This document shows positions 39,565 to 59,361 of a DNA stretch of 64,000 bases, one piece after another. The translations under genes were made by a program, and so were the position numbers. Under the pieces are notes generated by a model. That model saw only the letters and a list, made by a program, of their open reading frames with translations. It was not told the origin of the DNA and did not search any database. Position 1 is the first letter of the stretch. Each line of letters begins with the position of its first letter. The DNA lies in IMG/VR virus record IMGVR_UViG_3300023174_000042, positions 208,577-272,576 of that record; one strand, 5' to 3'.

Positions 39565-41061
39565 CTAACTGATTTGTCTAATAGCACTTTCTACTTTATC
39601 TTGATTTTTTAACTTGGTATTTTTTCTATCTTTGATTGCCAATTCAATTAATTGTTGATCCGATAGTCCGTTTTTGATTCCATTTTCCAAACTTTCAGCA
39701 AATTTTTTGAAAAACCCCGGTCCATTCCAACAAGCATATGACATATGAAGAGTTAAACCTGGTATTGATTGAATTTTTTCTTTAGTTTTTGGATCTTTTA
39801 CAAAATTTGACATATTTTTGTCAAAAGATCTTTTCATTATTTTAACTGCCAAATTTTTCAAAGATTGTTCTTTGTCTCCACCTCGATATAACCATTTCCA
39901 TTCTTTACAAAAGTCATCCATGTTTGACCAAGTGGTATTTGGTCCAACACCATTTGATTTAGCCCCAGCACCATATTTTTCTCCATCTATAATTTGAAAA
40001 AATTCTTTACCTTCAGGTGATGACTCAATATTTCCGTTATATCTGTCCAATCCAAACATTGTTTCTGTAGATTTTCCCATATTACCACCTGGATGCTTAC
40101 AAAACGGATTCCAATATCCGCCTTCAAACTTATCAATCACAATTTTTGTAACATTTTCAAAATTTGACAAATCAACAGCAGATAAATTGTTTTCATCAGA
40201 TTGACTTTCCTTACATATCTTTTGAACATCAGATACGTTAAATTCTTTTTTTCCTGTTTTTTCTTCCATAGCACTTTGAGTTTTAGGTCCAAAATATCCA
40301 TCTTGATTTATACCCAAGCAACCTTGCACTTGATATATAATTCCATTAGTATTTGGAGATTTATATTTAGTTCCGACATCTTTACAACCTTTTTTAAAAT
40401 TTGGTCCATCACAATCGGAGTATTTTTTTAATTTATCTGATATATCACTAACACTAGAACCACCACCTATAAGTGATATATCGTCACTTGTTTCGATTTC
40501 AGTTGGTTTGTCTGTCCTATTATATTCACCTTTACCTTCATGTGGAGGATAGTTTTTTGGTAAAGAATATTTGTAAAAAAATTGTCTAATATAAACACCA
40601 TCAGGGTTTTTGAAGTCTAATACTAATTTGATGTTTTCTGCGTCTTTTTTTTCTAATTTTCTAGTCAAATCATTTATTTGTCTTTCTGCTCTTATGTCTG
40701 CTCTGTTTCCTGCGGATCCTCGTGTAGAGATTCCCATATAAGCAATTCCATCTTTACTTTCATCAATAGTTGCTTCCCAATTTACAGTATAATTTGTAGA
40801 ATCAACTTTTATATTCAAATTTGTAATGTCGGGATTAATTCCAGCATCGTAAACTTCTTTTAATTTTTCATTTATTTTTGTTGACATTTTTCCTCCAAAA
40901 CCATCTGATTTTCTACTTTCAAATGAATGTAATGCGTCCGCATCTCCTTTTGGTGCTGTATAACCACCTTTAACAACAATAGGTAATGAAATTGTTTGTT
41001 CTTTTAACAGTCCCATTATTGATTTAATTCTAAAAATTTCTTCGTTAATATAAGGTTTCAT
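39565..41061 (-). CDS. leader-bearing multidomain protein: peptidoglycan-binding-like module plus lysozyme-fold (GH108-like) domain
   Basis: VQGCLGINQDGYFGPKT; IDKFEGGY..ETMFGLD. Confidence 0.65.
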   Translation of the reverse strand: MKPYINEEIFRIKSIMGLLKEQTISLPIVVKGGYTAPKGDADALHSFESRKSDGFGGKMSTKINEKLKEVYDAGINPDITNLNIKVDSTNYTVNWEATIDESKDGIAYMGISTRGSAGNRADIRAERQINDLTRKLEKKDAENIKLVLDFKNPDGVYIRQFFYKYSLPKNYPPHEGKGEYNRTDKPTEIETSDDISLIGGGSSVSDISDKLKKYSDCDGPNFKKGCKDVGTKYKSPNTNGIIYQVQGCLGINQDGYFGPKTQSAMEEKTGKKEFNVSDVQKICKESQSDENNLSAVDLSNFENVTKIVIDKFEGGYWNPFCKHPGGNMGKSTETMFGLDRYNGNIESSPEGKEFFQIIDGEKYGAGAKSNGVGPNTTWSNMDDFCKEWKWLYRGGDKEQSLKNLAVKIMKRSFDKNMSNFVKDPKTKEKIQSIPGLTLHMSYACWNGPGFFKKFAESLENGIKNGLSDQQLIELAIKDRKNTKLKNQDKVESAIRQIS

Positions 41062-41093
41062 TTACATAATAAATATAATTATTTTTCAAGTTT

Positions 41094-42548
41094 TTATACA
41101 GAATAAACAAACCTTTCATTTCCACAATTAAAAATTCTATAATATCCCAAAGTATTCATAATTTCCCGTTCAGTAAGTTTAGAATCATATCCCATTTTAA
41201 CTAATTTATGTTTTTGATAATTAATTCTATTTTTACGAACTTTATTTATGACATAACTATAGTTTGGTGGAGTAAAACCATGGGTTTCAAACCCTAACTT
41301 TTTATATAACTCCCCTGTTGCCCAAGAAATATCACAATAAGATAGGATTTTTTTTGGTTGATGATTGTTTAAAAAACATTTAAATAGTTTTGAAGCACCA
41401 CCAACAACAGAAATTCCAAGTTTATTACAAAATCTCACCAATTCATATTCACCTTCCTTTTGATTTTTATCTAATACTTTTCTAGTTTTCATAAATGTCA
41501 TCAAAGACACTAATTCACCTTCATAAAACAACCCATAATTAATATTAGTATTCACAAATCCTTGTAAATGGTTTTTATTTAGAAAATCCTTAATAACATG
41601 TTTTTCATCTATCTTCCTTATTGTTGTTTTTCTAGCAAAGATTTTTTTTGATTTTTTTATAACATTTGATATTATTGATTTTATAATGTCTAATTTGAAA
41701 TCAAAATCGTCTTCGTAAATGTGTATCAATTTGATGCCATATTTTTCACATAACTTTGTTTTTTCCAAATGATAATTTTTATTTACGTATAATTCTGAAT
41801 GCCATCTCATTCCATTGAATTCAAATCCCAATTTAAATTCTGGTAAATAGATATCAATTTCTTTTCTTTCGATTTTGAATGAATTAATTATTTCTCCATC
41901 ATAAATCTCTCCAATAATTTTATTTAATAAGACTTCTTTACCTGAAATGTTTTTTTCAACAGGTTTACACTTTGAACATAGTTCAGTTTTTATAATTTTT
42001 CTATTTGAAAATACAGATTTTTTAATTTTGGTTGGTCCGTGGATTTTACAATTAACGACAAAATTTTCTTCATCTTGATCAACAACATCAGGATTATTTT
42101 TTAAAAAAAGTTTAAAAATTGTTTCAACACGTTTTTGTTTTTCACTATTTAGGTTTTCAACTTTCCACTTGTTACTTTGCCTAAAATGCTCTGAACCCCA
42201 CTTTTTTAAAAAGGTTTTTTTGGTTTTTTCTTTAAAATTATCTGTTTTGAATACACACTTATCTCCGTATTTAAGTTCAAATGTTTTTTCTTTTTTGTTT
42301 TTTGAACATTTTGAAGAGCAAGTATAGTAACCCCCTTTATTTACAGATTGATTGTATCGTCGATATTGAATTTTTACTTCTTTGTTACAAACATCACATT
42401 TTGCATCAACAAGCAAATGACTTTTGGGATTTACTAATTCTATAGGTATTATATTAACTTCATTTAAAACTATATCAATATTGTTTTTTTTATAATATTG
42501 AGCAACATTCCCAACAATTCTAATTTTTAATTTTTTTGTTAAAAGCAT
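41094..42548 (-). CDS. putative free-standing endonuclease (Zn-binding repeats, PD-(D/E)XK/Vsr-like core, GNAT-like C-terminal domain)
   Basis: KCDVC, EIDIYLPEFKLGFEFNG..WHS, ELVRFC..GGASKLF. Confidence 0.7.
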   Translation of the reverse strand: MLLTKKLKIRIVGNVAQYYKKNNIDIVLNEVNIIPIELVNPKSHLLVDAKCDVCNKEVKIQYRRYNQSVNKGGYYTCSSKCSKNKKEKTFELKYGDKCVFKTDNFKEKTKKTFLKKWGSEHFRQSNKWKVENLNSEKQKRVETIFKLFLKNNPDVVDQDEENFVVNCKIHGPTKIKKSVFSNRKIIKTELCSKCKPVEKNISGKEVLLNKIIGEIYDGEIINSFKIERKEIDIYLPEFKLGFEFNGMRWHSELYVNKNYHLEKTKLCEKYGIKLIHIYEDDFDFKLDIIKSIISNVIKKSKKIFARKTTIRKIDEKHVIKDFLNKNHLQGFVNTNINYGLFYEGELVSLMTFMKTRKVLDKNQKEGEYELVRFCNKLGISVVGGASKLFKCFLNNHQPKKILSYCDISWATGELYKKLGFETHGFTPPNYSYVINKVRKNRINYQKHKLVKMGYDSKLTEREIMNTLGYYRIFNCGNERFVYSV

Positions 42549-42612
42549 GGTTAATATTTTTCTATAAATATAGTAAAATATTCATTTGTGTCCACCATTC
42601 AAGTTGATTTTT

Positions 42613-44202
42613 TTACCTATTTTCAGGTCTAAATCTATATGGATTGGCTTTGATTGCCGCTTTTGAAAAATAAGTCCCTTGTCCTTGTCGTCTGGCATTT
42701 TTTAATGATCTACCATATTCATTCATTTCGACTTCAAAATCAGGTTCGTAACGTTCATCATTTGATTGTTTAATTTTATCTCTTAAAGTTACAAAAAACT
42801 CCCTAGCCAATCTTTTCATGAATTTAACGTATTCAGCGTCTTCATCATCTTTTTTCTTATAGTATTTACTAACAGGAGGTCTTTTTGACCTATCTAAATA
42901 ACTTAAACCTGAAATATTAGTAATACATTTGTGTCCCCCACTGTTGGCTAAAATTAAATCCCAAGCAGATATTGTTATTTTGTCTAACACTTCACGTTGT
43001 TTATCTGTTAATGAATTAAATGGTTTTGACATAATAGAATCCAACATTTTGATATAAGAATCCGATCCTTCTTGTTTATCAAAAGAATTTGGATAAAGAG
43101 CCGTAAAGTCTTTTAATGTAAAACCAACAGATCCTTCACCAAAATCTTTGCTGTTTTCAGATATCCATTTAATTGTTGATAAAGGTATTTTTTTATTTTT
43201 TAATTCAGTTTCAAATTTCTTTAGAACTTCATCTTTAACTTCACCCAAATTAACACCTTTCAATGCTCTTTCTTTTTTAAATGGATTACAAGATGCTTGA
43301 ATCATTCCCATTGGCCAAACAAGAAGTAAAAAGTCTGCGTCAGGATTGTTTTTAAATGGTGTATAACGATCATAAGATCCTACGTCAAAAAGGTTACCTC
43401 CGCCATATTGAGTAATAATTCCATCAATTACCTTCACATTAGGAGAAGTTTTTTGTCTTTCAACATAAGATTCTTTATTTTTTTCTAATTGTTGTATATC
43501 CAAATAACCATTATTTTTCATCCAATCTTTAATATTTAAAAGAATATTCAAAAGTGAAGGTTTTGACTTCATTACAAGTTGTGTTAAAAAACCTTTCTTG
43601 TTTTTAAATGCCAATAGCAACTTGTTTGCCACAAGTCCCATCATTTTTTTATTTCCTTTAACATCTCTTTCTCGATCAATTTTGAATAAATAGTTCATGA
43701 CCTCACTTGGTGTTATATCATATTTAGCAAAATCTGCTGAGTCCACCATATTAATCAATTCAACATCTTCTTGAGTGAAAATATCTTTTGGTGATAATAC
43801 TTGAGAAATTGTTTCAACGTTAGATCTTGATGGTCTAAAACTTGTTGCGGTTCCACTTTCAACCCCTGCTTGTGTATCATGGTGATCGGTATGAATTACA
43901 TACATAGGTTTACCATGGGCAAAGTCAACCAAAACAGGCATAATTTCACCCTCACCTTCAGGTTTTTTTACAGCAAATTCTTTATCTCCATATTGTATTG
44001 TTTCAGCATCAACAACTTTAATTCCATTTTTTTCCAAATAGTCTTTCATAGCCAAGGCAGTTGTTACCCCATCTAAATCCATGTGAAAATAGATTTTAGC
44101 CATTTTATATCTTTTTGCTAGATCTTTGATACCTCTAATACCACTTTCATTCAATAATTTTGTGGTTTCTTCTTTTATTATTCGTCTTATTAAGTTTTTC
44201 AT
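42613..44202 (-). CDS. leader-bearing DHH-family phosphoesterase
   Basis: HMDLDG, VDF, TDHH, GGH; MKNLIRRIIKEE..LLNES leader. Confidence 0.8.
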   Translation of the reverse strand: MKNLIRRIIKEETTKLLNESGIRGIKDLAKRYKMAKIYFHMDLDGVTTALAMKDYLEKNGIKVVDAETIQYGDKEFAVKKPEGEGEIMPVLVDFAHGKPMYVIHTDHHDTQAGVESGTATSFRPSRSNVETISQVLSPKDIFTQEDVELINMVDSADFAKYDITPSEVMNYLFKIDRERDVKGNKKMMGLVANKLLLAFKNKKGFLTQLVMKSKPSLLNILLNIKDWMKNNGYLDIQQLEKNKESYVERQKTSPNVKVIDGIITQYGGGNLFDVGSYDRYTPFKNNPDADFLLLVWPMGMIQASCNPFKKERALKGVNLGEVKDEVLKKFETELKNKKIPLSTIKWISENSKDFGEGSVGFTLKDFTALYPNSFDKQEGSDSYIKMLDSIMSKPFNSLTDKQREVLDKITISAWDLILANSGGHKCITNISGLSYLDRSKRPPVSKYYKKKDDEDAEYVKFMKRLAREFFVTLRDKIKQSNDERYEPDFEVEMNEYGRSLKNARRQGQGTYFSKAAIKANPYRFRPENR

Positions 44203-44220
44203 TTATAATAAATATCTTAC

Positions 44221-45438
44221 TTAAACAAAAACTTGAGGAATATCATCCCAAGACGTTGTATATTTTTGTGTAATGTAATCTTGTTTCATTTCCCAATCAT
44301 GTGTTTGATTAACAGGAGACTTAATAATTTCAACCTGATCAAAAAATAATGACGTTTGAATAACGTTATCTGGTGTTAGTTCATTAAATACAATTCCACA
44401 TTTTTTATACTTTTCAGATTTATTACAAATTATTTTAAATTGTTCATATATCTGAGACCAAATTATATCAGCGTCTCTTGTTGGCGTTTGTAGTTTAATT
44501 ACTTTTGAATAATGATATTTATCTCCTTTATGATAATTACCTGACACAAATATTGTTGCTTTATTTGCCAACAATTTGTTTTGAGTTAATTTTTTTACAC
44601 CATTTTTAATATATGTATACATTGCTTCTCCAAGTTGATCAAACTCTGACACATCTTTTCCAAATGACCTTGTGGATGCAATATTTTTTTTAGGTTTTAG
44701 TGTTTTTAAAATTGGATAACAATATAACCCTTGAAGTTCTAATTGTGTTCTAATTCCATTTATATTCATTAATTTTTTTACAGTATATTCATGTGTGTTA
44801 ATAAATTGACCTACCGATTCTACTTCAATATTTTTTAGTTTTTTTGCCCATTTTCTTCCAATTCCCCAAACTTCATCAACGTCAATTTGATAACAAAGAC
44901 TTCTAAAGTTTTTAATATCCCAATAAGAACACACACCATTATAACTTGGTGATTTTTTTGCTAAATATGATGTGAGTTTTGCCAATGTTTTATTTGGTCC
45001 AACACCAATTGATACAGGAATACCTACTTTTCTTTTAACTTCTTCTTTAATTAACAAAAGTGTGTCATTTAGTTCTTCTTTTGGTATGTTTGAAAAATCA
45101 ACGAAAGCCTCATCAATCGAATATACTTCAATATCATTTCCAAACTCAGAGATTACTTTCATTACTCTATCAGACATATCACCATACAAATTGTAATTTG
45201 ATGAATACACACAAAATCTATGTTGATTCATAAATTCTCTACTTTGAAAAAATGGTTCTCCCATTTTAATTCCAAGGTCTTTTGCTTCTTGAGATCTAGC
45301 AATTACACACCCATCGTTGTTTGATAAAACAACCGTAGGTCTTCCAATCGATTCGGGATTAAATAATCTTTCACAACTAACATAAAAGTTGTTACAATCA
45401 ATAATTCCAATTTTTTTTAAGTTTTCTTTAATATCCAT
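44221..45438 (-). CDS. umuC: Y-family DNA polymerase V catalytic subunit
   Basis: IDCNNFYVSCER, VLSNNDGCVIARS, YSIDEAF, C-terminal WEMKQ..YTTSWDD. Confidence 0.92.
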   Translation of the reverse strand: MDIKENLKKIGIIDCNNFYVSCERLFNPESIGRPTVVLSNNDGCVIARSQEAKDLGIKMGEPFFQSREFMNQHRFCVYSSNYNLYGDMSDRVMKVISEFGNDIEVYSIDEAFVDFSNIPKEELNDTLLLIKEEVKRKVGIPVSIGVGPNKTLAKLTSYLAKKSPSYNGVCSYWDIKNFRSLCYQIDVDEVWGIGRKWAKKLKNIEVESVGQFINTHEYTVKKLMNINGIRTQLELQGLYCYPILKTLKPKKNIASTRSFGKDVSEFDQLGEAMYTYIKNGVKKLTQNKLLANKATIFVSGNYHKGDKYHYSKVIKLQTPTRDADIIWSQIYEQFKIICNKSEKYKKCGIVFNELTPDNVIQTSLFFDQVEIIKSPVNQTHDWEMKQDYITQKYTTSWDDIPQVFV

Positions 45439-45734
45439 GTGACCTTGCCCCATAAGTTTTTTTGTTCTTTGTATTCTCTAAGTTTAAAAAATGTTTTTTC
45501 TGTTAAGACAACCAAATCCCCGATTTTGGGTTCTTCATTTTTATCTATTACAAGAGTATCTCCTTGTTTTACACCAAAAACTTCTGGACCTGAATATTTA
45601 AAATAAAAAGTTGTATAAAAGTCTTTAACAATAAGTTCATTAAGGTCCAATCTTTTATCAACATAAGTTTCTGCAGGTGAAGCAAATCCTGTTGTTGTAG
45701 AATTAATTTGAATAGGATTTTTGTGTCTTAACAT
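45417..45734 (-). CDS. umuD: UmuD-like subunit, apparently protease-dead
   Basis: GFASPA..Y...LDLN.LI, GDTLVID, WGKVT; adjacent to umuC. Confidence 0.8.
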   Translation of the reverse strand: MLRHKNPIQINSTTTGFASPAETYVDKRLDLNELIVKDFYTTFYFKYSGPEVFGVKQGDTLVIDKNEEPKIGDLVVLTEKTFFKLREYKEQKNLWGKVTWILKKT

Positions 45735-45776
45735 ATACTAAAATATAGTAAATGTAAATGATAAAAAAAAGAATTT

Positions 45777-47536: not shown

Positions 47537-48185
47537 ATTTATTATTATAATAAGTTGCAATCCAATCAGCCTTCAGTAAAGGTTCTTGATTTAATATTGT
47601 GTCAATACCGACATAATATTTTTCAGTTTCGTAATAAGTTTCTCTTCGATATAAATAATTGTCTATATATTCTTCAACAGCATCTCCAACATCGGTTTTT
47701 TCCCCATTTAAAGTTGCTGATATTGGTTCTACTTTGTTGTCGATATAGTAAGTTTCACTATCCTCAAAATATAATTTCATACCAACAGATTCTATATTAA
47801 TCACATACTTATTATAACCAATAAATGGAGTTCCTGTTGTAAATTCAATTTTTCTTACAGAGTCAAAAACTTTTTGTATTTTGTTTCTTGTTTTGTTGCT
47901 AAGATAAAATTTAGGTAAATCATTCCACATAACTTCAACAAAAAACTCATAACTAACAAATTGTCCATATTCAATAACAATATCATCTAATAGTTCTTCA
48001 ATGATTGAATAATAATAAGAAACTTTATTTGGGTTTTTAATTACGAATTGAATTGGATAAAAACTTTTATTATTTTTTTTTGTTTCTTCTCCAACTCTAA
48101 CAGGGATACATTTTAACCCGTAAAGATCTATTTCATCTCCAGCAAAGTTTTTAAATAATTTTAATATTTTTTCTTGATTCATCAC
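47526..48185 (-). CDS. hypothetical protein
   Basis: 219-aa ORF. Confidence 0.7.
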   Translation of the reverse strand: MMNQEKILKLFKNFAGDEIDLYGLKCIPVRVGEETKKNNKSFYPIQFVIKNPNKVSYYYSIIEELLDDIVIEYGQFVSYEFFVEVMWNDLPKFYLSNKTRNKIQKVFDSVRKIEFTTGTPFIGYNKYVINIESVGMKLYFEDSETYYIDNKVEPISATLNGEKTDVGDAVEEYIDNYLYRRETYYETEKYYVGIDTILNQEPLLKADWIATYYNNKFIL

Positions 48186-49099
48186 GCAAACATTTTGTAT
48201 TCTCTTTCTCGTCTTGGTTTTAATCCAGGATAGTTATCAAATAAATTTTCACTAGTAACCAATATTTCTTTTTTTGCACCCTCAATGTCCCCTTTTTTTA
48301 GAAGTTGGATAAAATTTGATGTTCTTATTCCAGGACCCATATTAAATGTTATTGACACCATTGCGTCATACATACCTTGAGTTATCTGTGGTTTTATTCC
48401 TTTTTCTTCCCAATCATCAAGTATTTTATTAATTATATTTTCAGCTTTTTCAATATCATCTTTTAACAAAATCTCTGCCTGATCTTTTGTGATTTTTGTT
48501 TTACCTGAAATTATTTTGTTATAGTTTGGAAGAAAATCATATCCTTCTTTTTCTTTTTTGAATACAGCATGTCCATATCCGATTGTTTTTGCCTTATCCC
48601 CCAAATTATAAGCAACTAAAACTGGCTCACCTTTGTGTTTTAATGAACCTTCTTCCCATTTTAAATGATTATATAAGTCTTTTGAAGATTTTCTAATTTT
48701 TAGATCTTGTATTGGTTTTGTTAAAACTTCTTTTTCAAATTTTATTGCTTTTTCTACTGGAGGGTCAAGATAATTTTTTATTTGACCAACACTTAAAAGT
48801 CCGACCAGTGAAAATATGACATACTGAAATATTTTTCTTTTAACTTTGGATGGTAGATTTTTTATTTTATTAGATAGGGTATTTAAAAATTCTTTCGCAT
48901 CTTCTTTTGTTTTAACCCAATTTTTTGATTTGTCAATATCTTTTTTAACATCAGTAAAATCCCACTCCATATCAGGTTCAGTTTTACCATCATCTTCAGA
49001 AATTAAAGACAATTTGAAAACAAGATCATCAAGAACTTGTTCATAAATTAATTTAGATTGTATTGAGATATATTGATCTTCGGTTATTAAAACTTTCAT
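48182..49099 (-). CDS. leader-bearing phage lysozyme (GH24-like) with TM segment
   Basis: WEEG..AY..D..TIGYGH, YDAMVSITFNMG, GLKPRREREY. Confidence 0.85.
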   Translation of the reverse strand: MKVLITEDQYISIQSKLIYEQVLDDLVFKLSLISEDDGKTEPDMEWDFTDVKKDIDKSKNWVKTKEDAKEFLNTLSNKIKNLPSKVKRKIFQYVIFSLVGLLSVGQIKNYLDPPVEKAIKFEKEVLTKPIQDLKIRKSSKDLYNHLKWEEGSLKHKGEPVLVAYNLGDKAKTIGYGHAVFKKEKEGYDFLPNYNKIISGKTKITKDQAEILLKDDIEKAENIINKILDDWEEKGIKPQITQGMYDAMVSITFNMGPGIRTSNFIQLLKKGDIEGAKKEILVTSENLFDNYPGLKPRREREYKMFA

Positions 49100-50464: not shown

Positions 50465-51378
50465 CTGTTTCTTTTTTTGTTTTTAGATAAAATTTTATTT
50501 AAAAATTCAGTATTTGTTTTTGAATTATTTGATCTGTTTTCCTGTGGTTTAGACACAATAGATACATGTCTTTGAGCATTGAATATTTGATTTACTTTAT
50601 CATAGTTTATTTCTTTTTTTGTCCTTTCTAAAGTTTTTTTGATTTGTATTTCTTCTCGTTCTTGTTTAATTGACCTGATAAGATCATCTTTATTTTCATT
50701 TTGCGGGTTAAAGATTTCATTGACAATTTTTGTTTGTATGCCATCAGATTTTGATTCAGTATCATAAATTGTTGATTTTTGAGGTTGATACTTTAAAAAA
50801 TCACCTGAATGCGTTATACAGATTATTTCAATATTATTTTCAATACAATATTTCCCAATCCAAATATCCGCCATATTTGGATACAAGAAAAAATTTATTG
50901 GTATTTTCATCAAATTGGTATGAAAACACATCACACCTGTCCCTCCAAACTGAACTAAAACATTTTTTCTTTGTGGTTTAAGACAATGATAATTTTCAGA
51001 ATAAGAATTATAATATGAGTTTATCGGAAATGATGGGAAGTTTCTACCATGTAGAGTTATAACTCTTTTATTCGAGTATTCTTTACATCTACTTACCATA
51101 TAATTCACATAATTAGGAGGATATATTAAATCATCATCAATTGTTAGATAATAACCATCCGACTCCATTAATTTACCAAATTTTAAAGCATCACCATAAC
51201 TATTGTCGGAAAAAAATAAATTTATCTTACTATCTAATAATTTTTCAGGTATTTCACCTATATGATCATTTAAAAAAATATTAATCTCGTCACATTGATC
51301 GTATATTGAATTTATTGTATTTACTAAACTACCGATTCTATTATATGATGCAACATTTACTATAGTTTTTTCACTCAT
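50461..51378 (-). CDS. GT-A fold glycosyltransferase
   Basis: TIDDDLIYP, GTGVMCF, NMADIW. Confidence 0.8.
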   Translation of the reverse strand: MSEKTIVNVASYNRIGSLVNTINSIYDQCDEINIFLNDHIGEIPEKLLDSKINLFFSDNSYGDALKFGKLMESDGYYLTIDDDLIYPPNYVNYMVSRCKEYSNKRVITLHGRNFPSFPINSYYNSYSENYHCLKPQRKNVLVQFGGTGVMCFHTNLMKIPINFFLYPNMADIWIGKYCIENNIEIICITHSGDFLKYQPQKSTIYDTESKSDGIQTKIVNEIFNPQNENKDDLIRSIKQEREEIQIKKTLERTKKEINYDKVNQIFNAQRHVSIVSKPQENRSNNSKTNTEFLNKILSKNKKRNR

Positions 51379-52067
51379 GAAGTAATTAATTTATTTTTCT
51401 CTCTTTCGACTTTATTCATTTTAGACTCGTGATTTCCGTGATTAACTAATGAATTTTTAACGTGATATAAAAATTTACCACTACTATTTAATCTTTGGGT
51501 TATTTGATGTCCAACACCAGAACTTATATTTGGATTATTTAACCATCTACTTTCATTAATTTTATCAATCCTATAATTAAGTGTTTCAAAAAATTTTTTT
51601 TCACAAATAAAACATAAATCATTCCATTGTGTTTGTAAAAACTCACCAAAATCTTTAGGGTTACTATATCCCCAATGTGATCTTTTGATTCTATCATCTG
51701 TGAGTATACTTAAACATATTTTTTTTGTTGATGTTATTGAATCGTAGATACGTTTGGATTCATCAAAAAAATTATTAACTAAAGAAACATCATCAGGAAG
51801 ATAAATAAAATACTTAGAGTTTATGTTTTTAACAAAGCTAAATGTTGCGTTAAAAGTAACATAATATTTTCTTTTTCCCATATTTGGAAAAATTCCAATT
51901 TTGATAACATCTCTATTAGTAAAATCCAATTTTTCAGTGCTTCCATCATCAAAAACAACAACAAGAACTTTATAATTTTTTTTATTAGATTCAATATCAT
52001 CTAATAACCTATATAACATTTCAGGTCTATTGTAAGTTGTAATTAAAACACAAAAATCATATTCCAT
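51375..52067 (-). CDS. glycosyltransferase family 2-like
   Basis: LITTYNRP, FDDGS, LPDD. Confidence 0.8.
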   Translation of the reverse strand: MEYDFCVLITTYNRPEMLYRLLDDIESNKKNYKVLVVVFDDGSTEKLDFTNRDVIKIGIFPNMGKRKYYVTFNATFSFVKNINSKYFIYLPDDVSLVNNFFDESKRIYDSITSTKKICLSILTDDRIKRSHWGYSNPKDFGEFLQTQWNDLCFICEKKFFETLNYRIDKINESRWLNNPNISSGVGHQITQRLNSSGKFLYHVKNSLVNHGNHESKMNKVEREKNKLITS

Positions 52068-52069
52068 AA

Positions 52070-52690
52070 TCATCCATTTAATATTAAATTGCATTTATTA
52101 ATAAAATAAACATCTTTTTTACCAAATCTTGATTCAAAAGCGTGGTATGTGTTATTACTGTAAGTAGTTCCATAACCAAAACTATGATTCCCATCAAGAT
52201 CAAAATTAACTATCTCAGCGTGATTTGGTAATAATAAATTAACAGGTAAACCTTTTTCTTTTGCAATGTGTGACAGTTCTCCACCACAGTCAGATCTTTG
52301 GGTCGTATTAAATGATGGTCTACCCAATATATTATAAGTTCTAATACTAAAAACCAAAAATGATGGGGCAGCATAAATAAATTTATTATGTGGGAATTTA
52401 AGTTTTGGGGCAACTTGAGCGTTACCAAATAACCCATCGTTTTTTTTTGCCCAATCAACAGCAAGAGGTATTATTTTTTTATTTAATGGAATTGCATCAA
52501 TATCAAATAAAACAATAATTTTATCAGGATCATTTATATTTTTTAAATAATTGTCAACCGCATCACCATGTGTCGTCCAGTTATCAACCATCATTTGATT
52601 TATTGTAAAACCATATCTTTCAAAAACTCTTCTTTGTAAATCAACAATTAATGGTTTTATTTTTTTGTCGTAAAATGTTATAATTTCCAT
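52070..52690 (-). CDS. GT-A fold glycosyltransferase-like protein
   Basis: LFDIDAIPL DxD motif. Confidence 0.65.
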   Translation of the reverse strand: MEIITFYDKKIKPLIVDLQRRVFERYGFTINQMMVDNWTTHGDAVDNYLKNINDPDKIIVLFDIDAIPLNKKIIPLAVDWAKKNDGLFGNAQVAPKLKFPHNKFIYAAPSFLVFSIRTYNILGRPSFNTTQRSDCGGELSHIAKEKGLPVNLLLPNHAEIVNFDLDGNHSFGYGTTYSNNTYHAFESRFGKKDVYFINKCNLILNG

Positions 52691-53437
52691 CTATCTTAAA
52701 TATTCTTTTATTTTTTCTAACCAATTTTCTTTTTGAGAATATTTGGTGTTTTTACCAGGATTTTGATTTTTGATAAAAGGTGTGTCTTTCCAAAGAATTA
52801 AGATGTCTTTATTCATAGCACCCGCACAATGGGCTAATCCAGTATCATTTGATATGATTTTTTTAGCATCTCTAACAAGTGATAACGATTTTCTAATATT
52901 ACCTATTTCTATCTTATCACATATTTTTTCCATCCATGGATTTTGTTTCATATCCGATTCAGATCCTGTAAAATAAATTGGTAAATTGCTATTCTCTTTT
53001 ATTGTGTTGAATATTTCTTCAGGAATTTCTTTCTTACCATACCATTTTGGTTTAGGGTCATTGTCATCAAGCGATAAACCACCTAGACCATTTAATAATA
53101 ACAAATAATCTTCATCATTTTTTGGTATCTCTATTGCATTATCAACATATGTGTGATATTTTTCAGACCATTTTTCCCCAATCATTAATTCAAATGTATA
53201 TTGGTAGTCAGGGACATTTAAGTTAATCATTTTTGATGAGAATGTTGGCGGTCTATGCAATCTACCAATATGGTTCATAAAATTACAATCAATAAAACAT
53301 TCTTTAACGTAAGGTATGGTAAAATAAACATCAATTTTTTGACCAATTTTTTCAGATAACTTTTTTATCCCTGGAGTTAACATAATAAAATTACCTAAAG
53401 CGTATCCTGAATTTTGTTCGATTAATGGTCTTTTCAT
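52691..53437 (-). CDS. glycosyltransferase family 9-like (heptosyltransferase-like)
   Basis: LGNFIMLTP, ISNDTGLAHCAGA; start reassigned. Confidence 0.8.
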   Translation of the reverse strand: MKRPLIEQNSGYALGNFIMLTPGIKKLSEKIGQKIDVYFTIPYVKECFIDCNFMNHIGRLHRPPTFSSKMINLNVPDYQYTFELMIGEKWSEKYHTYVDNAIEIPKNDEDYLLLLNGLGGLSLDDNDPKPKWYGKKEIPEEIFNTIKENSNLPIYFTGSESDMKQNPWMEKICDKIEIGNIRKSLSLVRDAKKIISNDTGLAHCAGAMNKDILILWKDTPFIKNQNPGKNTKYSQKENWLEKIKEYLR

Positions 53438-53520
53438 ATTTTTATTATAATAAAATTCTTTTTTTAATATATACAAATAAATAATTTTTACATTCAAAAT
53501 AATTAAAGTAAAATTCATTT

Positions 53521-54102
53521 ATGTTAAATATTATTGCAGTAACTTATAACCATAAAGAATCCTTGAAGTGTTTTATCAATTCAATAAAAAATCAAACTAA
53601 TAATAATTGGACACTTTTTATTATTCACGACGGATTAAACCACACCCTTAAAGAAGAATTAACTAATGAAAATTATTTAAACGATAAAGTAATTTTTATT
53701 GAGCATCCAGTAAGAACTCAAAATTATGGTCATATACTTCGTAAGTGGTCTTTGGAAAATTTGAATCTAAATGGTAGAGTATTATTAACTAATGCAGATA
53801 ATTATTATACGCCAAATTTAGTTGATGAAGTTCTTAGCTATAGTGAAGATTTTATTTATTTCAATGTGATTCATTCTCATAAAAATAAAACCAATCATAA
53901 TAAATCAAACTATGGTTTTATGAACACAAAATTAGAACAAAGTAAAATAGATATGGGTTGTGTTGTGGTAAAATCTGAAATAGCAAAAAAAGTAGGTTTT
54001 AATTCGACTTCTTATGAAGCCGATTGGCATTATTTCGATGAAATATTAAAAACTAACCCGAGTATTTTAAAAATTGATAAAGTTTTATTTGTCCATAATT
54101 AA
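53521..54102 (+). CDS. glycosyltransferase family 2
   Basis: AVTYN, IIHDG, NADNYY, IDMG, ADW. Confidence 0.8.
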   Translation: MLNIIAVTYNHKESLKCFINSIKNQTNNNWTLFIIHDGLNHTLKEELTNENYLNDKVIFIEHPVRTQNYGHILRKWSLENLNLNGRVLLTNADNYYTPNLVDEVLSYSEDFIYFNVIHSHKNKTNHNKSNYGFMNTKLEQSKIDMGCVVVKSEIAKKVGFNSTSYEADWHYFDEILKTNPSILKIDKVLFVHN

Positions 54103-54416
54103 TTAGACTTATTTTTTTTCTTTCTCCCCTGACAATGCGCTCTCTGACTAAATCCTTTTGGGTTATTACAGTTGATTGATCTTTTATATTTTTCAGACCA
54201 CTTTTCTTCAATCGGTTCTTTAGATAATTTATTCTTCCAAAACTTGAATAGGTTTTCTTTATCATATTTACCCTTTTTTTGATCCCACCCACAATCATGG
54301 CAAAGAAAAGAATGTTTGTCATCATTCTCTTTTTTCCAAGAGTGTTCACACTTTTCACATTCAATCTTTTCGTTGAATATTCTATCTGCCTGTTTTTCTG
54401 AAATTAGTATTTTCAT
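54099..54416 (-). CDS. leader-bearing zinc-ribbon protein with C-terminal basic Cys peptide
   Basis: MKILISEKQ; CEKC..CHDC; IEE-KWSEKYKRSINCNNPKGFSQRAHC. Confidence 0.75.
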   Translation of the reverse strand: MKILISEKQADRIFNEKIECEKCEHSWKKENDDKHSFLCHDCGWDQKKGKYDKENLFKFWKNKLSKEPIEEKWSEKYKRSINCNNPKGFSQRAHCQGRKKKNKSN

Positions 54417-54709
54417 CTTCTTTTTTTAACTTTATTAAAACCATTTCTAATTTTTTCATTAAATTGACCACTAGATAACAATAAAAAATCAAATTTATCA
54501 GGTATTATCTTTGAATTTCTATATTCAAACTCCCTTCTAACTCTACTAATAATCCAATTTTCATAAACCCCAAAATTATCAGGTTTATTACCTGGTCCTC
54601 CTTTTTTAATATCATTATTAAGTTCAATAATAACCTCATCAATGATTTGACCTATTTCGGTTAATCTTCGTAATAATTTTATTTGATCTTCTGTTAATAC
54701 TATTTTCAT
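54413..54709 (-). CDS. leader-bearing hypothetical protein
   Basis: MKIVLTEDQIKLLRR. Confidence 0.75.
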   Translation of the reverse strand: MKIVLTEDQIKLLRRLTEIGQIIDEVIIELNNDIKKGGPGNKPDNFGVYENWIISRVRREFEYRNSKIIPDKFDFLLLSSGQFNEKIRNGFNKVKKRR

Positions 54710-55032
54710 TAGTAACAATTTTCAACTAAGTCATTATAAATACCAACTAAATAGTTATAGTATTTTTTGTCCATATAGTTTTCTACCTCATCACGAACTT
54801 CTACCATTGCTGGTGATGGTCCATCATAATCCTCATCTTCATCGTCTTCATCACAATATCCTTCATCACAGTAATAAAAATGAATTCCCTGCCCAATGCA
54901 AAAATCGGCGTAATCATCTTCATCTTCAAAATCACAAGGATCTTGTATTTCTGTTTGATATTCTATTATATCACCAATCTTTTCTAACTCAACACCTCGC
55001 CTAAGTAATCTAATAGGTATATCTAAATTCAT
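54709..55032 (-). CDS. acidic hypothetical protein
   Basis: 107-aa ORF. Confidence 0.65.
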   Translation of the reverse strand: MNLDIPIRLLRRGVELEKIGDIIEYQTEIQDPCDFEDEDDYADFCIGQGIHFYYCDEGYCDEDDEDEDYDGPSPAMVEVRDEVENYMDKKYYNYLVGIYNDLVENCY

Positions 55033-55895
55033 AACTTAATTTTTTCTTTGGTTTTATTGTCATAAATAGTAAATGGATTAGCAATTACCACCCAATCAAC
55101 ATGAGGATATTCATCTTCAGGTCTCCAAGCATATTTGTTAGTTTTAACTTGTATAGTTTTTAACCCAAAGTCAGGATGAGACATAATCAAATCAGTTCCA
55201 AATACCATATCAATTAAATCACCATTTCCACCACTATATTCCTCCGTAAACCCTTTTTTCTCCAATTCCTCTCTTACTTTATTTTCAGCCTCTTCACCAC
55301 TCTTAGTTGTTCCAAGAGTATTTTTTGTGTAATCGTTGAAAACTCTGGGATCGTCAAAATATTTATTGATTAATCTTTTAATAAAAGGTTTTAATTTGCT
55401 TAGTTCTTCTTTTGGATTTTCTATGACTTTTTGAATTATTGGTTGAGCTCTATTTCCTCCCATAAAAAGTAAATCGGTTACCAATTCACCCAAATCATAA
55501 TAGTTTGTGTTTAGTTTATTAATTGGTTGCCATTCTCCGTTGAAATAAACCAATTTACCTCCCATAACTTTATTTTCAATAAAATTGTTTTTTTCTTCTT
55601 CAGTAATTTTTCCTGCCGATTGTAACAAATTAGCACCTTCAATAAACTTTTTTTTCAATTCATCAGGTATATCTGTTTTTAAGTCTTTGATCTTATCTTG
55701 AATTATATTATTTAGATCCAAACCATAATACTTGTGAAGCCAAGATTTTAAAGTTATAATACTTTGACATAAATTATGTTTTTGTGACTTTTCGGGATAT
55801 CTTTGACAAGCACGATATTCTGATTCTGTAATTAATGGTGGAAGACCCATCAACTCACCAATTCTTGTTATTTCTTCGTTAATTAATTTATTCAT
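55029..55895 (-). CDS. leader-bearing protein with C-terminal PD-(D/E)XK-like nuclease motif
   Basis: EEITRIGELMGL..LITE; GEEAE..DMVFGTDLI..TIQVK. Confidence 0.6.
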   Translation of the reverse strand: MNKLINEEITRIGELMGLPPLITESEYRACQRYPEKSQKHNLCQSIITLKSWLHKYYGLDLNNIIQDKIKDLKTDIPDELKKKFIEGANLLQSAGKITEEEKNNFIENKVMGGKLVYFNGEWQPINKLNTNYYDLGELVTDLLFMGGNRAQPIIQKVIENPKEELSKLKPFIKRLINKYFDDPRVFNDYTKNTLGTTKSGEEAENKVREELEKKGFTEEYSGGNGDLIDMVFGTDLIMSHPDFGLKTIQVKTNKYAWRPEDEYPHVDWVVIANPFTIYDNKTKEKIKL

Positions 55896-56633: not shown

Positions 56634-56656
56634 CTAAACTTTTATTATAAATACTT

Positions 56657-57007: not shown

Positions 57008-57011
57008 AGTT

Positions 57012-57906: not shown

Positions 57907-58032
57907 ATATTATAAATATCTACTAGTTATGTAAAAATCATACTTTACATACTTTTTTAATTAATAATTGATAATTTTTATTATTATATTATTATAAAAT
58001 ATAAACTATTTATTTCAAAAAAGAAATTAATA

Positions 58033-58863
58033 ATGGACCCTACAAAAATTCTTTTACTTGTAAAATATACTAAACAAATTCACAAATCTTTAAAGGATTT
58101 TTCAAATTCTGATATTTTTAATACTATTGCAGACATCAGAAATAAAATCTATAATGATGAGTTCTTGAGTTTATATCTTTCTAAATTAAATGGTTCTGAG
58201 GAATTATACTTGTTTTTTTCAATTTATCTTTATCATAAAAATGGTGACGCTGCAAAATCAGTAAAGTATGTTTTAGAAAATTTAAAAGGATATTTTTTTT
58301 CAGAATTTGAAAATGATGGATATAAATTAGAAGAGTGTGGAAATTGCTATGGTTACGGAAGAGAAGATTGTGACTATTGCGATGGATCAGGAACTGAAGA
58401 ATGTAGAGAATGTAGTGGTGAAGGAGTTGTTACTTGTGATGACTGTGGTGGTTCAGGTGAAGATGAAGATGGACAAAGATGCGAAACTTGTAATGGAGAT
58501 AGTCACGTAACTTGTGAAGATTGCCAAGGTCGTGGTTCTTCTACATGTAATAGTTGTGGTGGTGATGGTCATTTTGAATGTAATGATTGTAATGGTTCAG
58601 GCGAAGTAGAAACTGACGAACTATTAGTTAATGAAGTAAATTCTTCAGTTTACACACTAAATAATTTGGACTTAATTTTTGATGAAGGTGAATTGATAAA
58701 TGAAAAAGTCTATGAAACTAGAGTCTTAATACAGCCTTATTTTAGAATAGCAAAATGGTCAGGTGATTATACAGTTGATGAAATTGAATATGAATTTGAT
58801 TTAGAAAATTTGGACTTTTCAAATGGTTATCTTGTTTTATATAACGGAAGATTACCTGTTTAA
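58033..58863 (+). CDS. protein with eight DnaJ-type CxxCxGx(G) zinc-finger repeats, no J domain
   Basis: CGNCYGYG, CDYCDGSG, CRECSGEG etc. Confidence 0.8.
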   Translation: MDPTKILLLVKYTKQIHKSLKDFSNSDIFNTIADIRNKIYNDEFLSLYLSKLNGSEELYLFFSIYLYHKNGDAAKSVKYVLENLKGYFFSEFENDGYKLEECGNCYGYGREDCDYCDGSGTEECRECSGEGVVTCDDCGGSGEDEDGQRCETCNGDSHVTCEDCQGRGSSTCNSCGGDGHFECNDCNGSGEVETDELLVNEVNSSVYTLNNLDLIFDEGELINEKVYETRVLIQPYFRIAKWSGDYTVDEIEYEFDLENLDFSNGYLVLYNGRLPV

Positions 58864-59361
58864 AAACTTCAACTTATACATTGTTGAATAGATCAATTCT
58901 TGAATTCCATCAATTTGATTTTGAATGTAAGTATCTTCACAACAATCTCTTTTTTCTTCTATTGTGTTTAATAAACTTGTAAAGTATTTTAAAACTTGAT
59001 TTTTGTTTTTATAAGTTTGATTTTTATATGACTTATAATTTTTTAAAAGTCCGTATTTTCCTTGAAAAGATTCAATTAAACTATCAACAAGCTCATCAAT
59101 TCCTTCATAGTATTTTTGAAGAGATTTGTGTTCTGCATATGAATTTGTTCCTAAATGGAAAATATGAACTTGTGTTTGTGAATGTAATAATTGACAAACC
59201 ATTTCACAAAAATCTTCGTTATGACTTGAAGAAGTTTGATCTTCATTTTCATCAGTATCATCGTTTTCTTTTTGGTCATCATCGTCATCTTCTTCTTGTT
59301 CCCAAAGATTTCTTCTTTTTAATTCTTCTTTTAGTTTTTCTGTCAAATCAAACTTATTCAT
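58852..59361 (-). CDS. leader-bearing ferritin/Dps-like protein (DUF5856-like)
   Basis: HIFHL.T.SYAEHKSL..YY..D.LIE.FQG, YKLKFL. Confidence 0.75.
   Translation of the reverse strand: MNKFDLTEKLKEELKRRNLWEQEEDDDDDQKENDDTDENEDQTSSSHNEDFCEMVCQLLHSQTQVHIFHLGTNSYAEHKSLQKYYEGIDELVDSLIESFQGKYGLLKNYKSYKNQTYKNKNQVLKYFTSLLNTIEEKRDCCEDTYIQNQIDGIQELIYSTMYKLKFLNR

What the first reader, a model, noticed from the sequence alone, without database searches (positions are those of the whole stretch)
39565..59361. Recognisable enzymes have acquired the leader
Seen: the leader precedes a GH108-like domain (39565), a DHH phosphoesterase (42613), a GH24 lysozyme (48182), a PD-(D/E)XK-like domain (55029) and a ferritin/Dps-like domain (58852). 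Earlier in the window it precedes HExxH proteins (11735, 32770) and a ParB/Srx-like domain (32331). The amidase at 60706 has no leader. Inference: leader-bearing muramidases are virion entry enzymes and the amidase is the endolysin. The DHH enzyme could degrade nucleotide signals of host defence at the moment of infection.
Basis: partly seen in the sequence, partly recalled or inferred. Interest (0 to 1): 0.65.

Follow-up and report, generated by a model that had tools for sequence, protein, structure and literature searches.

The report
Capsid-targeting leaders on phage enzymes
A 272-kb T4-like freshwater phage puts a short, modular N-terminal leader ending in the cutting motif of its own head protease on at least 44 unrelated proteins, several of them enzymes, which most likely marks them for packing into the capsid and injection into the host.

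Summary
The window is the last 64 kb of a 272,576-bp freshwater T4-like jumbo phage that has a Gp23 capsid protein and a gp21-type (S77) prohead protease. At least 44 of about 323 genes, 31 of them in the window, start with a 7-25 residue amphipathic leader. There is a family of related leader types, not one leader. All end in (L/I)-x-E, the cleavage motif of T4 gp21.

The leader is modular. Orthologues swap leader types. In four cargo families the variable leader meets the conserved domain exactly at (L/I)-x-E. One 22-residue leader precedes 47 unrelated sequence clusters in other viral contigs, and conservation collapses right after its terminal Glu. Many leader genes share an upstream TATTTAT motif with the structural genes.

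Domain calls:
- Confirmed: GH24 lysozyme, DUF5856 (ferritin-like).
- Supported by motifs and fold: DHH/DHHA1.
- Corrected: "GH108-like" is a lysozyme-superfamily domain, not a Pfam GH108 member.
- Motif-level only: PD-(D/E)XK, ParB/Srx, HExxH.

The best explanation is a greatly expanded version of T4's capsid targeting sequence. No proteomics exists, so packaging and cleavage are inferred. The proposed role of the DHH enzyme in degrading nucleotide signals is speculation. Its only cellular homologue carries a secretion signal, and some phage homologues are fused to cell-wall hydrolases.

The parts
39565..41061 (-). 498-aa protein: type B leader ending L-K-E (residue 21), unknown N-domain, PG_binding-like repeat, and a C-terminal lysozyme-superfamily domain with an invariant E-G-G-Y motif
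   Evidence: AF2 pLDDT 89.9. VIA-align: GH24 endolysins Z 8.6/8.3, VgrG3 Z 8.0, GH108 2ikb Z 6.2. No Pfam GH108 hit. Orthologues keep (L/I)xE before a conserved x-I-S-L-P-I.
42613..44202 (-). 529-aa protein: type A leader (L-K-E-like site at residue 11 and L-N-E at 19), DHH/DHHA1-type phosphoesterase, basic C-terminal tail
   Evidence: Pfam DHH 0.0034, below cut-off. Invariant DxD, D, DHH and GGH motifs. Foldseek top hits are PggH, RecJ/Cdc45, NrnA and GdpP. In 64 orthologues the peptide before S-G-[IL]-R always ends [LIV]xE.
48182..49099 (-). 305-aa protein: type C leader (I-T-E at residue 7), about 80-aa spacer, hydrophobic helix at residues 89-107, GH24 lysozyme at 162-300
   Evidence: PF00959 1e-18 and phrog_7. 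Hydrophobic window. Shorter GH24 relatives carry a different leader.
54099..54416 (-). 105-aa protein: type C leader, CxxC...CxxC zinc-ribbon-like motif, C-terminal 'C-N-N-P-K-G-F-S' module also found on DHH homologues
54413..54709 (-). 98-aa protein with type C leader
55029..55895 (-). 288-aa protein: type B leader (I-N-E at residue 7, I-T-E at 24) and a C-terminal candidate PD-(D/E)XK-like domain (invariant E204, D226, D229, D235, Q249-x-K251)
   Evidence: Alignment A3. Atlas leads to Hjc, TaqI, MjaI and Mrr families, all below 0.9. No Pfam or PDB hit.
58852..59361 (-). 169-aa protein: N-terminal helix ending L-W-E, acidic linker, DUF5856 (ferritin-like) domain at 69-164
   Evidence: PF19174 2.4e-22 and phrog_858. 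Orthologues keep (L/I/F/M)xE-Q at the same place. The Ackermannviridae homologue is leaderless and annotated as a structural protein.
34623..39513 (-). Tandem array of five type A leader genes (1018, 214, 145, 112 and 144 aa), cargo unknown
31454..34594 (-). Four leader genes in an array with non-leader ORFs: 31454-32329 (hybrid), 32331-32768 (type B, D-G-H-H-R motif), 32770-33366 (hybrid, H-E-I-S-H motif), 34031-34594 (type B)
   Evidence: No Pfam support for ParB or a metalloprotease.
24659..29765 (-). Cluster of ten small leader genes: type D (25576, 26060, 26556, 27130, 29334), type C (24659, 25071, 28031, 28841) and a short type A-like (28360)
19493..23924 (-). Further leader genes: 19493-20020 (D), 20074-20925, 20973-21464 (B), 21487-21825, 23064-23924 (C)
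1979..12340 (.). Further leader genes: 1979-2728 (D), 5830-6963, 6967-8085 (B, with membrane helix and PG-binding-like repeat), 8093-9289, 11125-11745 (+ strand, C), 11735-12340 (weak leader, H-E-L-R-H motif)
60706..61647 (-). PG_binding_1 + Amidase_2 protein with no leader and no TATTTAT motif; the likely true start is the internal Met at M-K-T-L-E-L

Best explanation
The leaders are capsid-targeting propeptides of the T4 type.

Proposed sequence of events:
1. Leader genes are transcribed with the structural genes from a TATTTAT-type late promoter.
2. The N-terminal amphipathic helix docks the precursor onto the scaffolding core of the assembling prohead.
3. The gp21-like S77 prohead protease cuts after the (L/I)-x-E that ends the leader.
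4. The freed cargo stays inside the capsid with the DNA and is ejected into the host at infection.

Proposed cargos: two lysozyme-type enzymes, a DHH/DHHA1 phosphoesterase, a nuclease-like protein, a ferritin-like protein and dozens of small proteins of unknown function.

Shown here: the leaders exist and are restricted to N-termini; they are modular; (L/I)xE lies at the leader/cargo boundary; the protease is present with its catalytic residues; the leader genes share an upstream motif with structural genes.

Inferred by analogy with T4 IPI-III, Alt, gp24, gp67 and gp68: docking, cleavage, packaging and ejection.
For: 1. The phage is T4-like. It has Pfam Gp23 (1.4e-64) and Peptidase_S77 (9.9e-24). 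The protease is 35% identical to T4 gp21 and keeps the E-L-N-H-P and S-S-R-G catalytic motifs. The capsid protein has F-L-I-N-E|A where T4 gp23 has its F-L-T-E|A maturation site.
2. gp21 cuts after L/I-X-E, and a 10-residue N-terminal CTS is sufficient for packaging (PMC9026906; PMC5694885).
3. 43 of 44 leader genes have [LI]xE in the first 25 residues, against 89 of 279 other genes. This is partly circular, because the leader definition itself includes an acidic end.
4. Independent boundary evidence:
- In 64 DHH orthologues the variable peptide always ends [LIV]xE directly before the conserved S-G-I-R.
- The same holds in the 39565, 55029 and DUF5856 families.
- Among 71 distinct type D proteins from other viral contigs, positions 13-22, which the search pattern did not fix, stay conserved (E22 in 65 of 71). 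Entropy jumps from at most 1.7 bits to 2.9 bits or more right after E22. The downstream parts form 47 unrelated clusters.
5. Orthologues swap leader types or gain and lose them.
6. T4's own processed head proteins start much like the short leader: M-E-L-I-T-E (Alt), M-E-G-L-I-E (gp67), M-A-K-I-N-E-L-L-R-E (gp24). DHH homologues in 640-kb phages start with K-Y-x-Q-F-I-N-E, close to T4's Y-Q-E-F-I-A-E.
7. TATTTAT lies 4-20 nt upstream of 83 genes (24-fold enriched). These include portal, protease, scaffold, terminase and tail genes and 23 of 44 leader genes (Fisher p 5e-4); others sit in operon-like arrays behind such a gene. The same motif precedes structural genes of Flavobacterium phage immuto.
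8. Both 100%-complete genomes that carry the type D leader encode S77.
9. In the AF2 model of the DHH protein the leader is a separate helix (residues 2-14) followed by a low-confidence linker that holds L-N-E.
10. A DUF5856 homologue is probably the 13-kDa 'unknown structural protein' found by MS in LIMEstone1 virions.
Against: - There is no virion proteomics or N-terminal sequencing for this phage or any close relative.
- The leaders are not sequence homologues of the T4 IP leader.
- 44 or more packaged species (14% of genes) far exceeds T4.
- Two leader proteins (48182, 6967) have membrane helices. That fits some ejection proteins but also fits non-virion membrane proteins.
- (L/I)xE is common in this Glu/Ile/Leu-rich proteome (32% of other N-termini).
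- The 7-residue type C leader could partly reflect a preference for A/T-rich early codons.
- The major capsid gene itself lacks a nearby TATTTAT.
- The protease-leader co-fold gave no verdict.
Confidence: 0.6

Rival explanations
1. The leader is a shared N-terminal interaction helix, used for oligomerisation, chaperone docking or localisation in the infected cell. It has nothing to do with the capsid, and the proteins act inside the producing cell and are not cleaved.
For: The leaders are amphipathic helices. The number of carriers is very large. Most cargos are small proteins of unknown function. No proteomics exists.
Against: This does not explain why conservation stops exactly at (L/I)xE in several unrelated families. 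It does not explain why leader types are interchangeable in front of one enzyme. It does not explain the upstream motif shared with structural genes or the resemblance to T4 head-protein N-termini.
Confidence: 0.17
2. The leader targets proteins to the virion or to assembly, but to another compartment (tail, baseplate, neck) or as removable assembly factors. Alternatively it works mainly as a protease-removed inhibitory prosegment (zymogen control) rather than as a packaging signal.
For: Cell-wall hydrolases of myoviruses are usually baseplate-borne (T4 gp5, established knowledge). A leader protein (G000 178439-179209) lies beside the capsid gene, and 8093-9289 has a weak tape-measure-like PHROG hit.
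Against: The only known activity site of the S77 protease is the prohead interior (PMC9026906). Cargo diversity (47 clusters behind one leader) fits free internal proteins better than fixed structural positions.
Confidence: 0.13
3. The shared N-termini are a nucleotide- or translation-level feature (A/T-rich start region, recombination hot spot, recent duplications of one gene) and not a functional peptide.
For: The genome has 28% G+C. M-K-[KI]-I-I uses AAA/ATT codons. Many leader genes are tandem neighbours.
Against: Copies differ at synonymous sites while the peptide is kept. The conserved peptide runs to 22 residues with helical periodicity. The downstream sequences are unrelated folds: DHH, lysozyme-like, ferritin-like. 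The motif is kept across contigs from many samples.
Confidence: 0.04

Closest known systems
T4 capsid targeting sequence of internal proteins IPI, IPII and IPIII (Mullaney and Black 1996; reviewed in PMC9026906 and PMC3012670)
   Same: A short N-terminal peptide sits on otherwise unrelated, fast-evolving proteins. It ends in L/I-x-E. The phage has a gp21-type protease and a Gp23 capsid. The cargos are hypervariable behind a conserved leader. In T4 the cargos are injected anti-defence proteins.
   Different: The leader sequence differs and comes in at least four or five interchangeable types, some with two (L/I)xE sites. There are 44 or more carriers instead of three to a handful. The cargos include recognisable enzymes. 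The host is probably a freshwater member of the Bacteroidota. Nothing has been shown experimentally.
N-terminal propeptides of T4 Alt, gp24, gp67 and gp68
   Same: The first residues M-E-L-I-T-E, M-E-G-L-I-E and M-L-L-I-P-E resemble the minimal leader M-K-K-L-I-x-E / M-K-I-I-I-T-E. Alt is an enzyme packaged and injected.
   Different: In T4 these are single conserved head components, not a family of swappable leaders.
Propeptide-bearing ejection and inner-body proteins of giant phages phiKZ, 201phi2-1 and SPN3US (PMC5694885, PMC7411985)
   Same: Jumbo phages pack tens of different proteins. A diverged gp21-like protease cuts after Glu. Paralogues share identical N-termini. Some ejection proteins have membrane helices.
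   Different: Their motif is S/A-x-E. Their propeptides are mostly more than 100 residues. Their capsid and protease are only remotely T4-like. Here the leaders are 7-25 residues with L/I-x-E.
Phage P1 Dar anti-restriction proteins packed in the head (PMC9024508)
   Same: Accessory proteins are loaded into the capsid through N-terminal targeting regions and injected with the DNA.
   Different: P1 uses hierarchical protein-protein loading, not a short shared protease-cleaved leader.
Encapsulin cargo-loading peptides (established knowledge)
   Same: A short modular peptide specifies encapsidation of diverse enzymes, including ferritin-like proteins, in an HK97-fold shell.
   Different: The peptide is usually C-terminal and is not cleaved, and the system is not a virus.

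Membership tests
T4-type capsid targeting / gp21-processed propeptide | Short peptide at the extreme N-terminus of otherwise unrelated proteins | tested here: met
   N-terminal restriction (26 of 31 motif hits in the first 11 residues). 151 similar N-terminal pairs against 13 in the control. Cargos have different folds.
T4-type capsid targeting / gp21-processed propeptide | Leader ends in the protease motif L/I-x-E, at the boundary with the mature protein | tested here: met
   43 of 44 leader genes. 64 of 64 DHH orthologues. E22 in 65 of 71 type D proteins, with an entropy jump after it. Boundaries in the 39565, 55029 and DUF5856 families.
T4-type capsid targeting / gp21-processed propeptide | Genome encodes a gp21-type (S77) prohead protease with a catalytic His/Ser pair, and a capsid protein with a matching maturation site | tested here: met
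   PF03420 at 81 bits. 35% identity to T4 gp21 with both motifs kept. F-L-I-N-E|A aligned to T4 F-L-T-E|A.
T4-type capsid targeting / gp21-processed propeptide | Sequence similarity to the T4 IP leader (M-K-T-Y-Q-E-F-I-A-E) | tested here: inconclusive
   The window's leaders differ in sequence and resemble the Alt, gp67 and gp24 N-termini more. DHH homologues of 640-kb phages carry K-Y-x-Q-F-I-N-E.
T4-type capsid targeting / gp21-processed propeptide | Protein present in the virion with the leader removed; leader sufficient to load a foreign protein | not testable with these tools
   Needs virion proteomics or N-terminomics and reporter fusions. The only indirect hint is the LIMEstone1 MS hit for a DUF5856 homologue.
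DHH/DHHA1 phosphoesterases (gene 42613) | Motifs I-IV (DxD, D, DHH, GGGH-like) in order | tested here: met
   D42/D44, D93, D106-H107-H108 and G422-G423-H424 are invariant or nearly so in 25 homologues. The motif definitions come from established knowledge of the family.
DHH/DHHA1 phosphoesterases (gene 42613) | Pfam DHH/DHHA1 above the gathering threshold | tested here: not met
   PF01368 at 18.1 bits against a cut-off of 28.1. No DHHA1 hit. No PDB sequence hit, even with a profile.
DHH/DHHA1 phosphoesterases (gene 42613) | Two-domain DHH fold | tested here: met
   The top 14 Foldseek hits are nearly all DHH-family proteins (PggH 1.3e-4, RecJ/Cdc45, PAP phosphatase, DhhP), with NrnA and GdpP further down. 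Model pLDDT is 69.5 and TM-scores are low because of domain placement.
GH108 lysozymes (gene 39565, residues 290-498) | Match to Pfam Glyco_hydro_108 | tested here: not met
   No hit for the protein or for any of 27 homologues at E<=1.
GH108 lysozymes (gene 39565, residues 290-498) | Lysozyme-like fold with catalytic Glu in an E-G-G-Y/W motif | tested here: inconclusive
   E24-G25-G26-Y27 is invariant. The fold is lysozyme-superfamily, but the best matches are GH24 endolysins (Z 8.6, 8.3), VgrG3 (Z 8.0), SagA and chitosanase. The GH108 structure 2ikb scores Z 6.2. The Atlas lead is T6SS_VgrG3-like_C.
GH24 lysozymes (gene 48182) | Match to Pfam Phage_lysozyme above the cut-off | tested here: met
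   68.3 bits against a cut-off of 22.3, residues 162-300. phrog_7 endolysin 2.4e-23.
PD-(D/E)XK nucleases (gene 55029) | Core motif D...(D/E)-x-K on a restriction-endonuclease-like fold | tested here: inconclusive
   Invariant D235...Q249-x-K251 (Gln in place of Asp/Glu) and E204. The only leads are language-model hits below 0.9 to Hjc, TaqI, MjaI and Mrr. No Pfam or PDB hit.
Ferritin-like DUF5856 (gene 58852) | Match to Pfam PF19174 above the cut-off | tested here: met
   80.2 bits against a cut-off of 34.6, residues 69-164. phrog_858 9.3e-25.
ParB/Srx (32331) and zinc metallopeptidases (11735, 32770) | Family profile match beyond the short D-G-H-H-R or H-E-x-x-H motif | tested here: not met
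   No Pfam hit, even at E<=5. HExxH occurs 5 times in the proteome (1.1 expected), 3 of them in leader proteins.

The most novel reading that the evidence does not exclude
A widespread clade of uncultured freshwater T4-like jumbo phages uses a small set of interchangeable protease-cleaved leader peptides as a general cargo-loading code. With it, each phage packs dozens of different proteins (about one gene in seven) into the capsid and injects them with the DNA. These include phosphoesterases, nucleases, cell-wall hydrolases and ferritin-like proteins. If so, the leader would be a sequence tag that reads out the injected proteome, and candidate anti-defence factors, directly from metagenomes.
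Probability: 0.35. Interest if true: 0.8.

Novelty: new variant of a known kind. Interest (0 to 1): 0.62.

Why it matters
Proteins that a phage injects with its DNA act before any phage gene is expressed. They are therefore prime candidates for counter-defence and take-over functions, and outside T4, P1 and a few giant phages they are almost unknown.

If these leaders are capsid-targeting signals, a simple N-terminal motif plus (L/I)xE would identify the injected proteome of thousands of uncultured phages. The DHH family alone gave more than 3,700 hits, and the type D leader occurs in 90 viral-contig stretches. The motif would point to new enzyme activities delivered at entry. It would also offer natural tags for loading foreign proteins into capsids of phages that infect non-model hosts.

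Tried and rejected
- Megablast of 21 kb against GenBank phages found no match.
- PHROGs gave nothing for most leader proteins or for most head-module neighbours; Pfam gave nothing usable for most leader proteins.
- PDB sequence searches gave nothing usable, whether with single proteins or with profiles of the DHH, lysozyme-like and 55029 families.
- Foldseek with the 39565 domain gave only non-significant lysozyme hits. The exhaustive VIA-align search was needed.
- The co-fold of the prohead protease with the first 40 residues of the DHH protein gave no verdict: score 0.00, controls not run. It is not evidence either way.
- RNA runs: none of the listed holders of this DNA is an RNA run, so expression timing could not be checked and read laying was not used.
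- Considered and rejected: a Sec/Tat or lipoprotein signal (the leaders are charged and amphipathic, with no hydrophobic core or Cys); a recently duplicated paralogue family (the cargos are unrelated); a purely nucleotide-level element (synonymous variation).
- The big representative-protein search was not used. The word search had already given thousands of relatives, and the library carries no names or genomic context.

Full report
WHAT THE WINDOW IS

The window is G000:C1:208577-272576, the last 64 kb of a 272,576-bp IMG/VR virus record that is rated 93% complete. G+C is about 28%. The genome encodes a Pfam Gp23 major capsid protein (1.4e-64) and a Peptidase_S77 prohead protease (9.9e-24). 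The protease is 35% identical to T4 gp21 and keeps the E-L-N-H-P and S-S-R-G catalytic motifs.

The nearest cultured capsid relatives share about 41-44% identity. They are Microcystis phage Mel-JY01 and the Flavobacterium phage immuto group. Near-identical DNA occurs in lake and freshwater metagenomes of at least five studies. This is therefore a recurrent freshwater T4-like jumbo phage. Its host is probably a member of the Bacteroidota; that inference rests on the relatives and on the style of the signal peptides.

THE OBSERVATION

Genome-wide, the four core motifs fall in the first 11 residues in 26 of 31 occurrences, where about 1.3 would be expected. The first 17 residues of 323 crude gene calls give 151 similar pairs, against 13 for a control segment at residues 42-58. 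A permissive definition finds 44 carriers. Of these, 31 are in the window and 42 are on the minus strand. The similarity graph suggests about 60.

The leader is a family, not a single sequence:
- Type A is the M-K-E-L-I-R-H-I-L-K-E-E kind.
- Type B is N-E-E-I-x-R-I-K-x-x-M-G-L followed by (L/I)xE.
- Type C is M-K-I-I-I-T-E-D-Q.
- Type D is type C joined to type A (M-K-R-I-I-R-L-T-E-S-D-L-x-R-I-V-R-R-V-I-x-E).
- Hybrids and a further 'E-K-x-x-I-x-x-L-[HY]' variant also occur.

Codons differ between copies, so selection acts on the peptide.

THE CARGO DOMAINS
- 48182 is a GH24 lysozyme at residues 162-300 (PF00959, 1e-18). It lies behind a spacer and a hydrophobic helix at residues 89-107.
- 58852 is DUF5856 (2.4e-22), which matches a PHROG family annotated as starvation-inducible regulator (Dps-like).
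- 42613 scores below Pfam's DHH cut-off. All four DHH motifs are nevertheless invariant in 25 homologues. Its AF2 model finds PggH, RecJ/Cdc45, NrnA, GdpP and other DHH proteins as best structural matches.
- The C-terminal domain of 39565 has an invariant E-G-G-Y and a confident model (pLDDT 89.9). The model aligns to the lysozyme superfamily: GH24 endolysins at Z 8.6 and 8.3, VgrG3 at Z 8.0, SagA, chitosanases, and the GH108 protein 2ikb at Z 6.2. It has no Pfam GH108 match. I therefore call it lysozyme-superfamily of the VgrG3/GH108 kind, not a GH108 member.
- 55029 has an invariant E...D...Q-x-K pattern and weak language-model leads to PD-(D/E)XK families, and nothing more.
- 32331, 32770 and 11735 have only their short motifs.
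- The amidase at 60706 (PG_binding_1 + Amidase_2) has no leader.

MODULARITY AND THE BOUNDARY

The word search returned more than 3,700 hits for the DHH enzyme. The contexts inspected are phage-like. In 64 orthologues fetched from viral contigs, the peptide before the conserved S-G-[IL]-R varies. It ranges from a 6-8 residue M-K-K-L-I-x-E to 19-residue type A leaders, and one homologue (P0009) carries a type C leader. In every case it ends in [LIV]-x-E.

The lysozyme-like domain of 39565 occurs behind type B, type D and other leaders, joined by acidic or Ser-rich linkers. The 39565, 55029 and DUF5856 families all place (L/I)xE at the junction with the conserved part. The protein at 54709 lacks a leader that its orthologues have.

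A degenerate DNA pattern for the first 12 residues of type D found 90 stretches in IMG/VR. Among the 71 distinct proteins, positions 13-22 were not fixed by the pattern yet remain conserved (E22 in 65 of 71). Entropy rises from at most 1.7 bits to at least 2.9 bits immediately after E22. The downstream parts form 47 unrelated clusters. The leader is thus a discrete unit that stops at I-x-E.

THE LINK TO HEAD ASSEMBLY

T4 gp21 cuts after L/I-X-E, and the 10-residue N-terminal CTS of IPIII is sufficient for packaging (PMC9026906; PMC3012670; PMC5694885). Read from the T4 record, the processed head proteins begin as follows:
- IPII and IPIII: M-K-T-Y-Q-E-F-I-A-E
- gp24: M-A-K-I-N-E-L-L-R-E
- Alt: M-E-L-I-T-E
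- gp67: M-E-G-L-I-E
- gp68: M-L-L-I-P-E

The short leaders here look like the last three. The capsid protein of this phage has F-L-I-N-E|A aligned with T4's F-L-T-E|A site.

TATTTAT lies 4-20 nt upstream of 83 genes, a 24-fold enrichment. These genes include portal, protease, scaffold, terminase and many tail genes, and 23 of 44 leader genes. Further leader genes follow such a gene in overlapping arrays. The same motif precedes the structural genes of phage immuto, which also has leader-like N-termini next to its head genes.

Both 100%-complete genomes that carry the type D leader encode S77. DHH homologues in two 640-kb phages start with K-Y-x-Q-F-I-N-E, close to the T4 leader, and those genomes have weak S77-like matches.

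A leaderless DUF5856 homologue in Ackermannviridae is annotated as an unknown structural protein after phage LIMEstone1, whose virion MS lists a 13.15-kDa protein of that kind. The mapping is probable but not verified residue by residue (PMC3296691).

A profile scan covered one genome from each of 185,579 prokaryote species and found three relatives of the DHH enzyme. Two lie on 3-kb contigs of 32-33% G+C inside Aquiluna and Thiobacillus MAGs. They carry phage leaders, and I take them for mis-binned phage DNA. The third lies on a 60-kb contig of 68% G+C in a Myxococcales MAG. It is 33% identical (2e-76) from residue 29 on, and it has a classical Sec-type signal peptide where the phage has its leader.

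It also suggests that this enzyme family works outside the cytoplasm. Phage homologues fused to the lysozyme-like domain (P0051) or to a PG-binding module (P0096) point the same way, as does a DHH gene followed directly by a leader-GH24 gene.

VERDICT

The best-supported reading, at about 0.6, is a much expanded and diversified T4-type capsid-targeting and propeptide system. Docking, cleavage, packaging and ejection are inferred, not shown. The rival readings are these: a non-virion interaction helix (0.17), targeting to another virion compartment or zymogen control (0.13), and a nucleotide-level artefact (0.04).

Whether the muramidases are entry enzymes and the amidase is the endolysin cannot be decided from sequence. 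The nucleotide-signal idea for the DHH enzyme is one option among several.

Among the 19 library papers since 2019 that mention the capsid targeting sequence, none appeared from its title or abstract to describe such a leader family. I rate the finding a new variant of a known kind.

Noticed in passing
window-wide, e.g. upstream of 44202, 41061, 49099, 59361; G000 182170-191732: A TATTTAT motif lies 4-20 nt before the start codon of 83 of 323 genes (24-fold enriched). These include portal, protease, scaffold, terminase and tail genes. The same motif occurs in Flavobacterium phage immuto. It is probably the late promoter of this phage group, with very short 5' leaders.
   Followed up: partly
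window 41094-42548 (-): A 484-aa homing-endonuclease-like gene (phrog_3339, 2.8e-100) sits between the lysozyme-like and DHH leader genes.
   Followed up: no
window 44221-45734 (-): A UmuC-like Y-family polymerase (IMS, IMS_C, DUF4113) overlaps a 105-aa ORF that looks UmuD-like by eye. This would be a translesion-synthesis pair in a phage.
   Followed up: no
window 42613-42720 (C-terminus of DHH), 54099-54200; L029:11432-12580; P0021, P0032: Two small basic or Cys-containing modules shuffle among leader proteins. One is W-S-x-K-Y-K-x-S-I-x-C-x-N-P-K-G-F-S; the other is A-R-R-Q-G-x-G-x-x-F-x-K-x-A-[IV]-K...R-F-R. They occur at the DHH C-terminus, on the 54099 protein and in front of a GH24 domain in a relative. 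Their function is unknown.
   Followed up: partly
L187:4827-6491 (Myxococcales MAG contig JAGQIK010000452.1): This is the only cellular homologue of the phage DHH-like enzyme found in 185,579 species genomes. It carries a Sec-type signal peptide, so the family may act in the envelope or outside the cell.
   Followed up: partly
L185, L186 (3-kb contigs in Aquiluna and Thiobacillus MAGs): These low-GC (32-33%) contigs encode the phage DHH gene with a phage leader. They are probably phage DNA mis-binned into bacterial MAGs.
   Followed up: partly
window 49511-54102: A block of glycosyltransferase-like genes lies among the leader genes, with no leader. GT2 was confirmed by Pfam only for 53521-54102 on the plus strand; the others were judged by eye.
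   Followed up: no
L092:845-1390 (phage CBA120 orf109): The neighbour of the leaderless DUF5856 gene in Ackermannviridae starts M-K-P-F-I-E-Y-F-K-E, very like the T4 IP leader. Its size matches a 20.3-kDa unknown structural protein of LIMEstone1.
   Followed up: partly
window 11735-12340, 32770-33366; G000 18256-19506: Three of the five HExxH motifs in the whole proteome (1.1 expected) are in leader-bearing proteins. No metallopeptidase profile matches any of them.
   Followed up: partly
window 6967-8085 (-): This type B leader protein has a Pro/Glu/Lys-rich repeat, a membrane helix and a C-terminal PG-binding-like repeat. It is another possible envelope-acting cargo.
   Followed up: no
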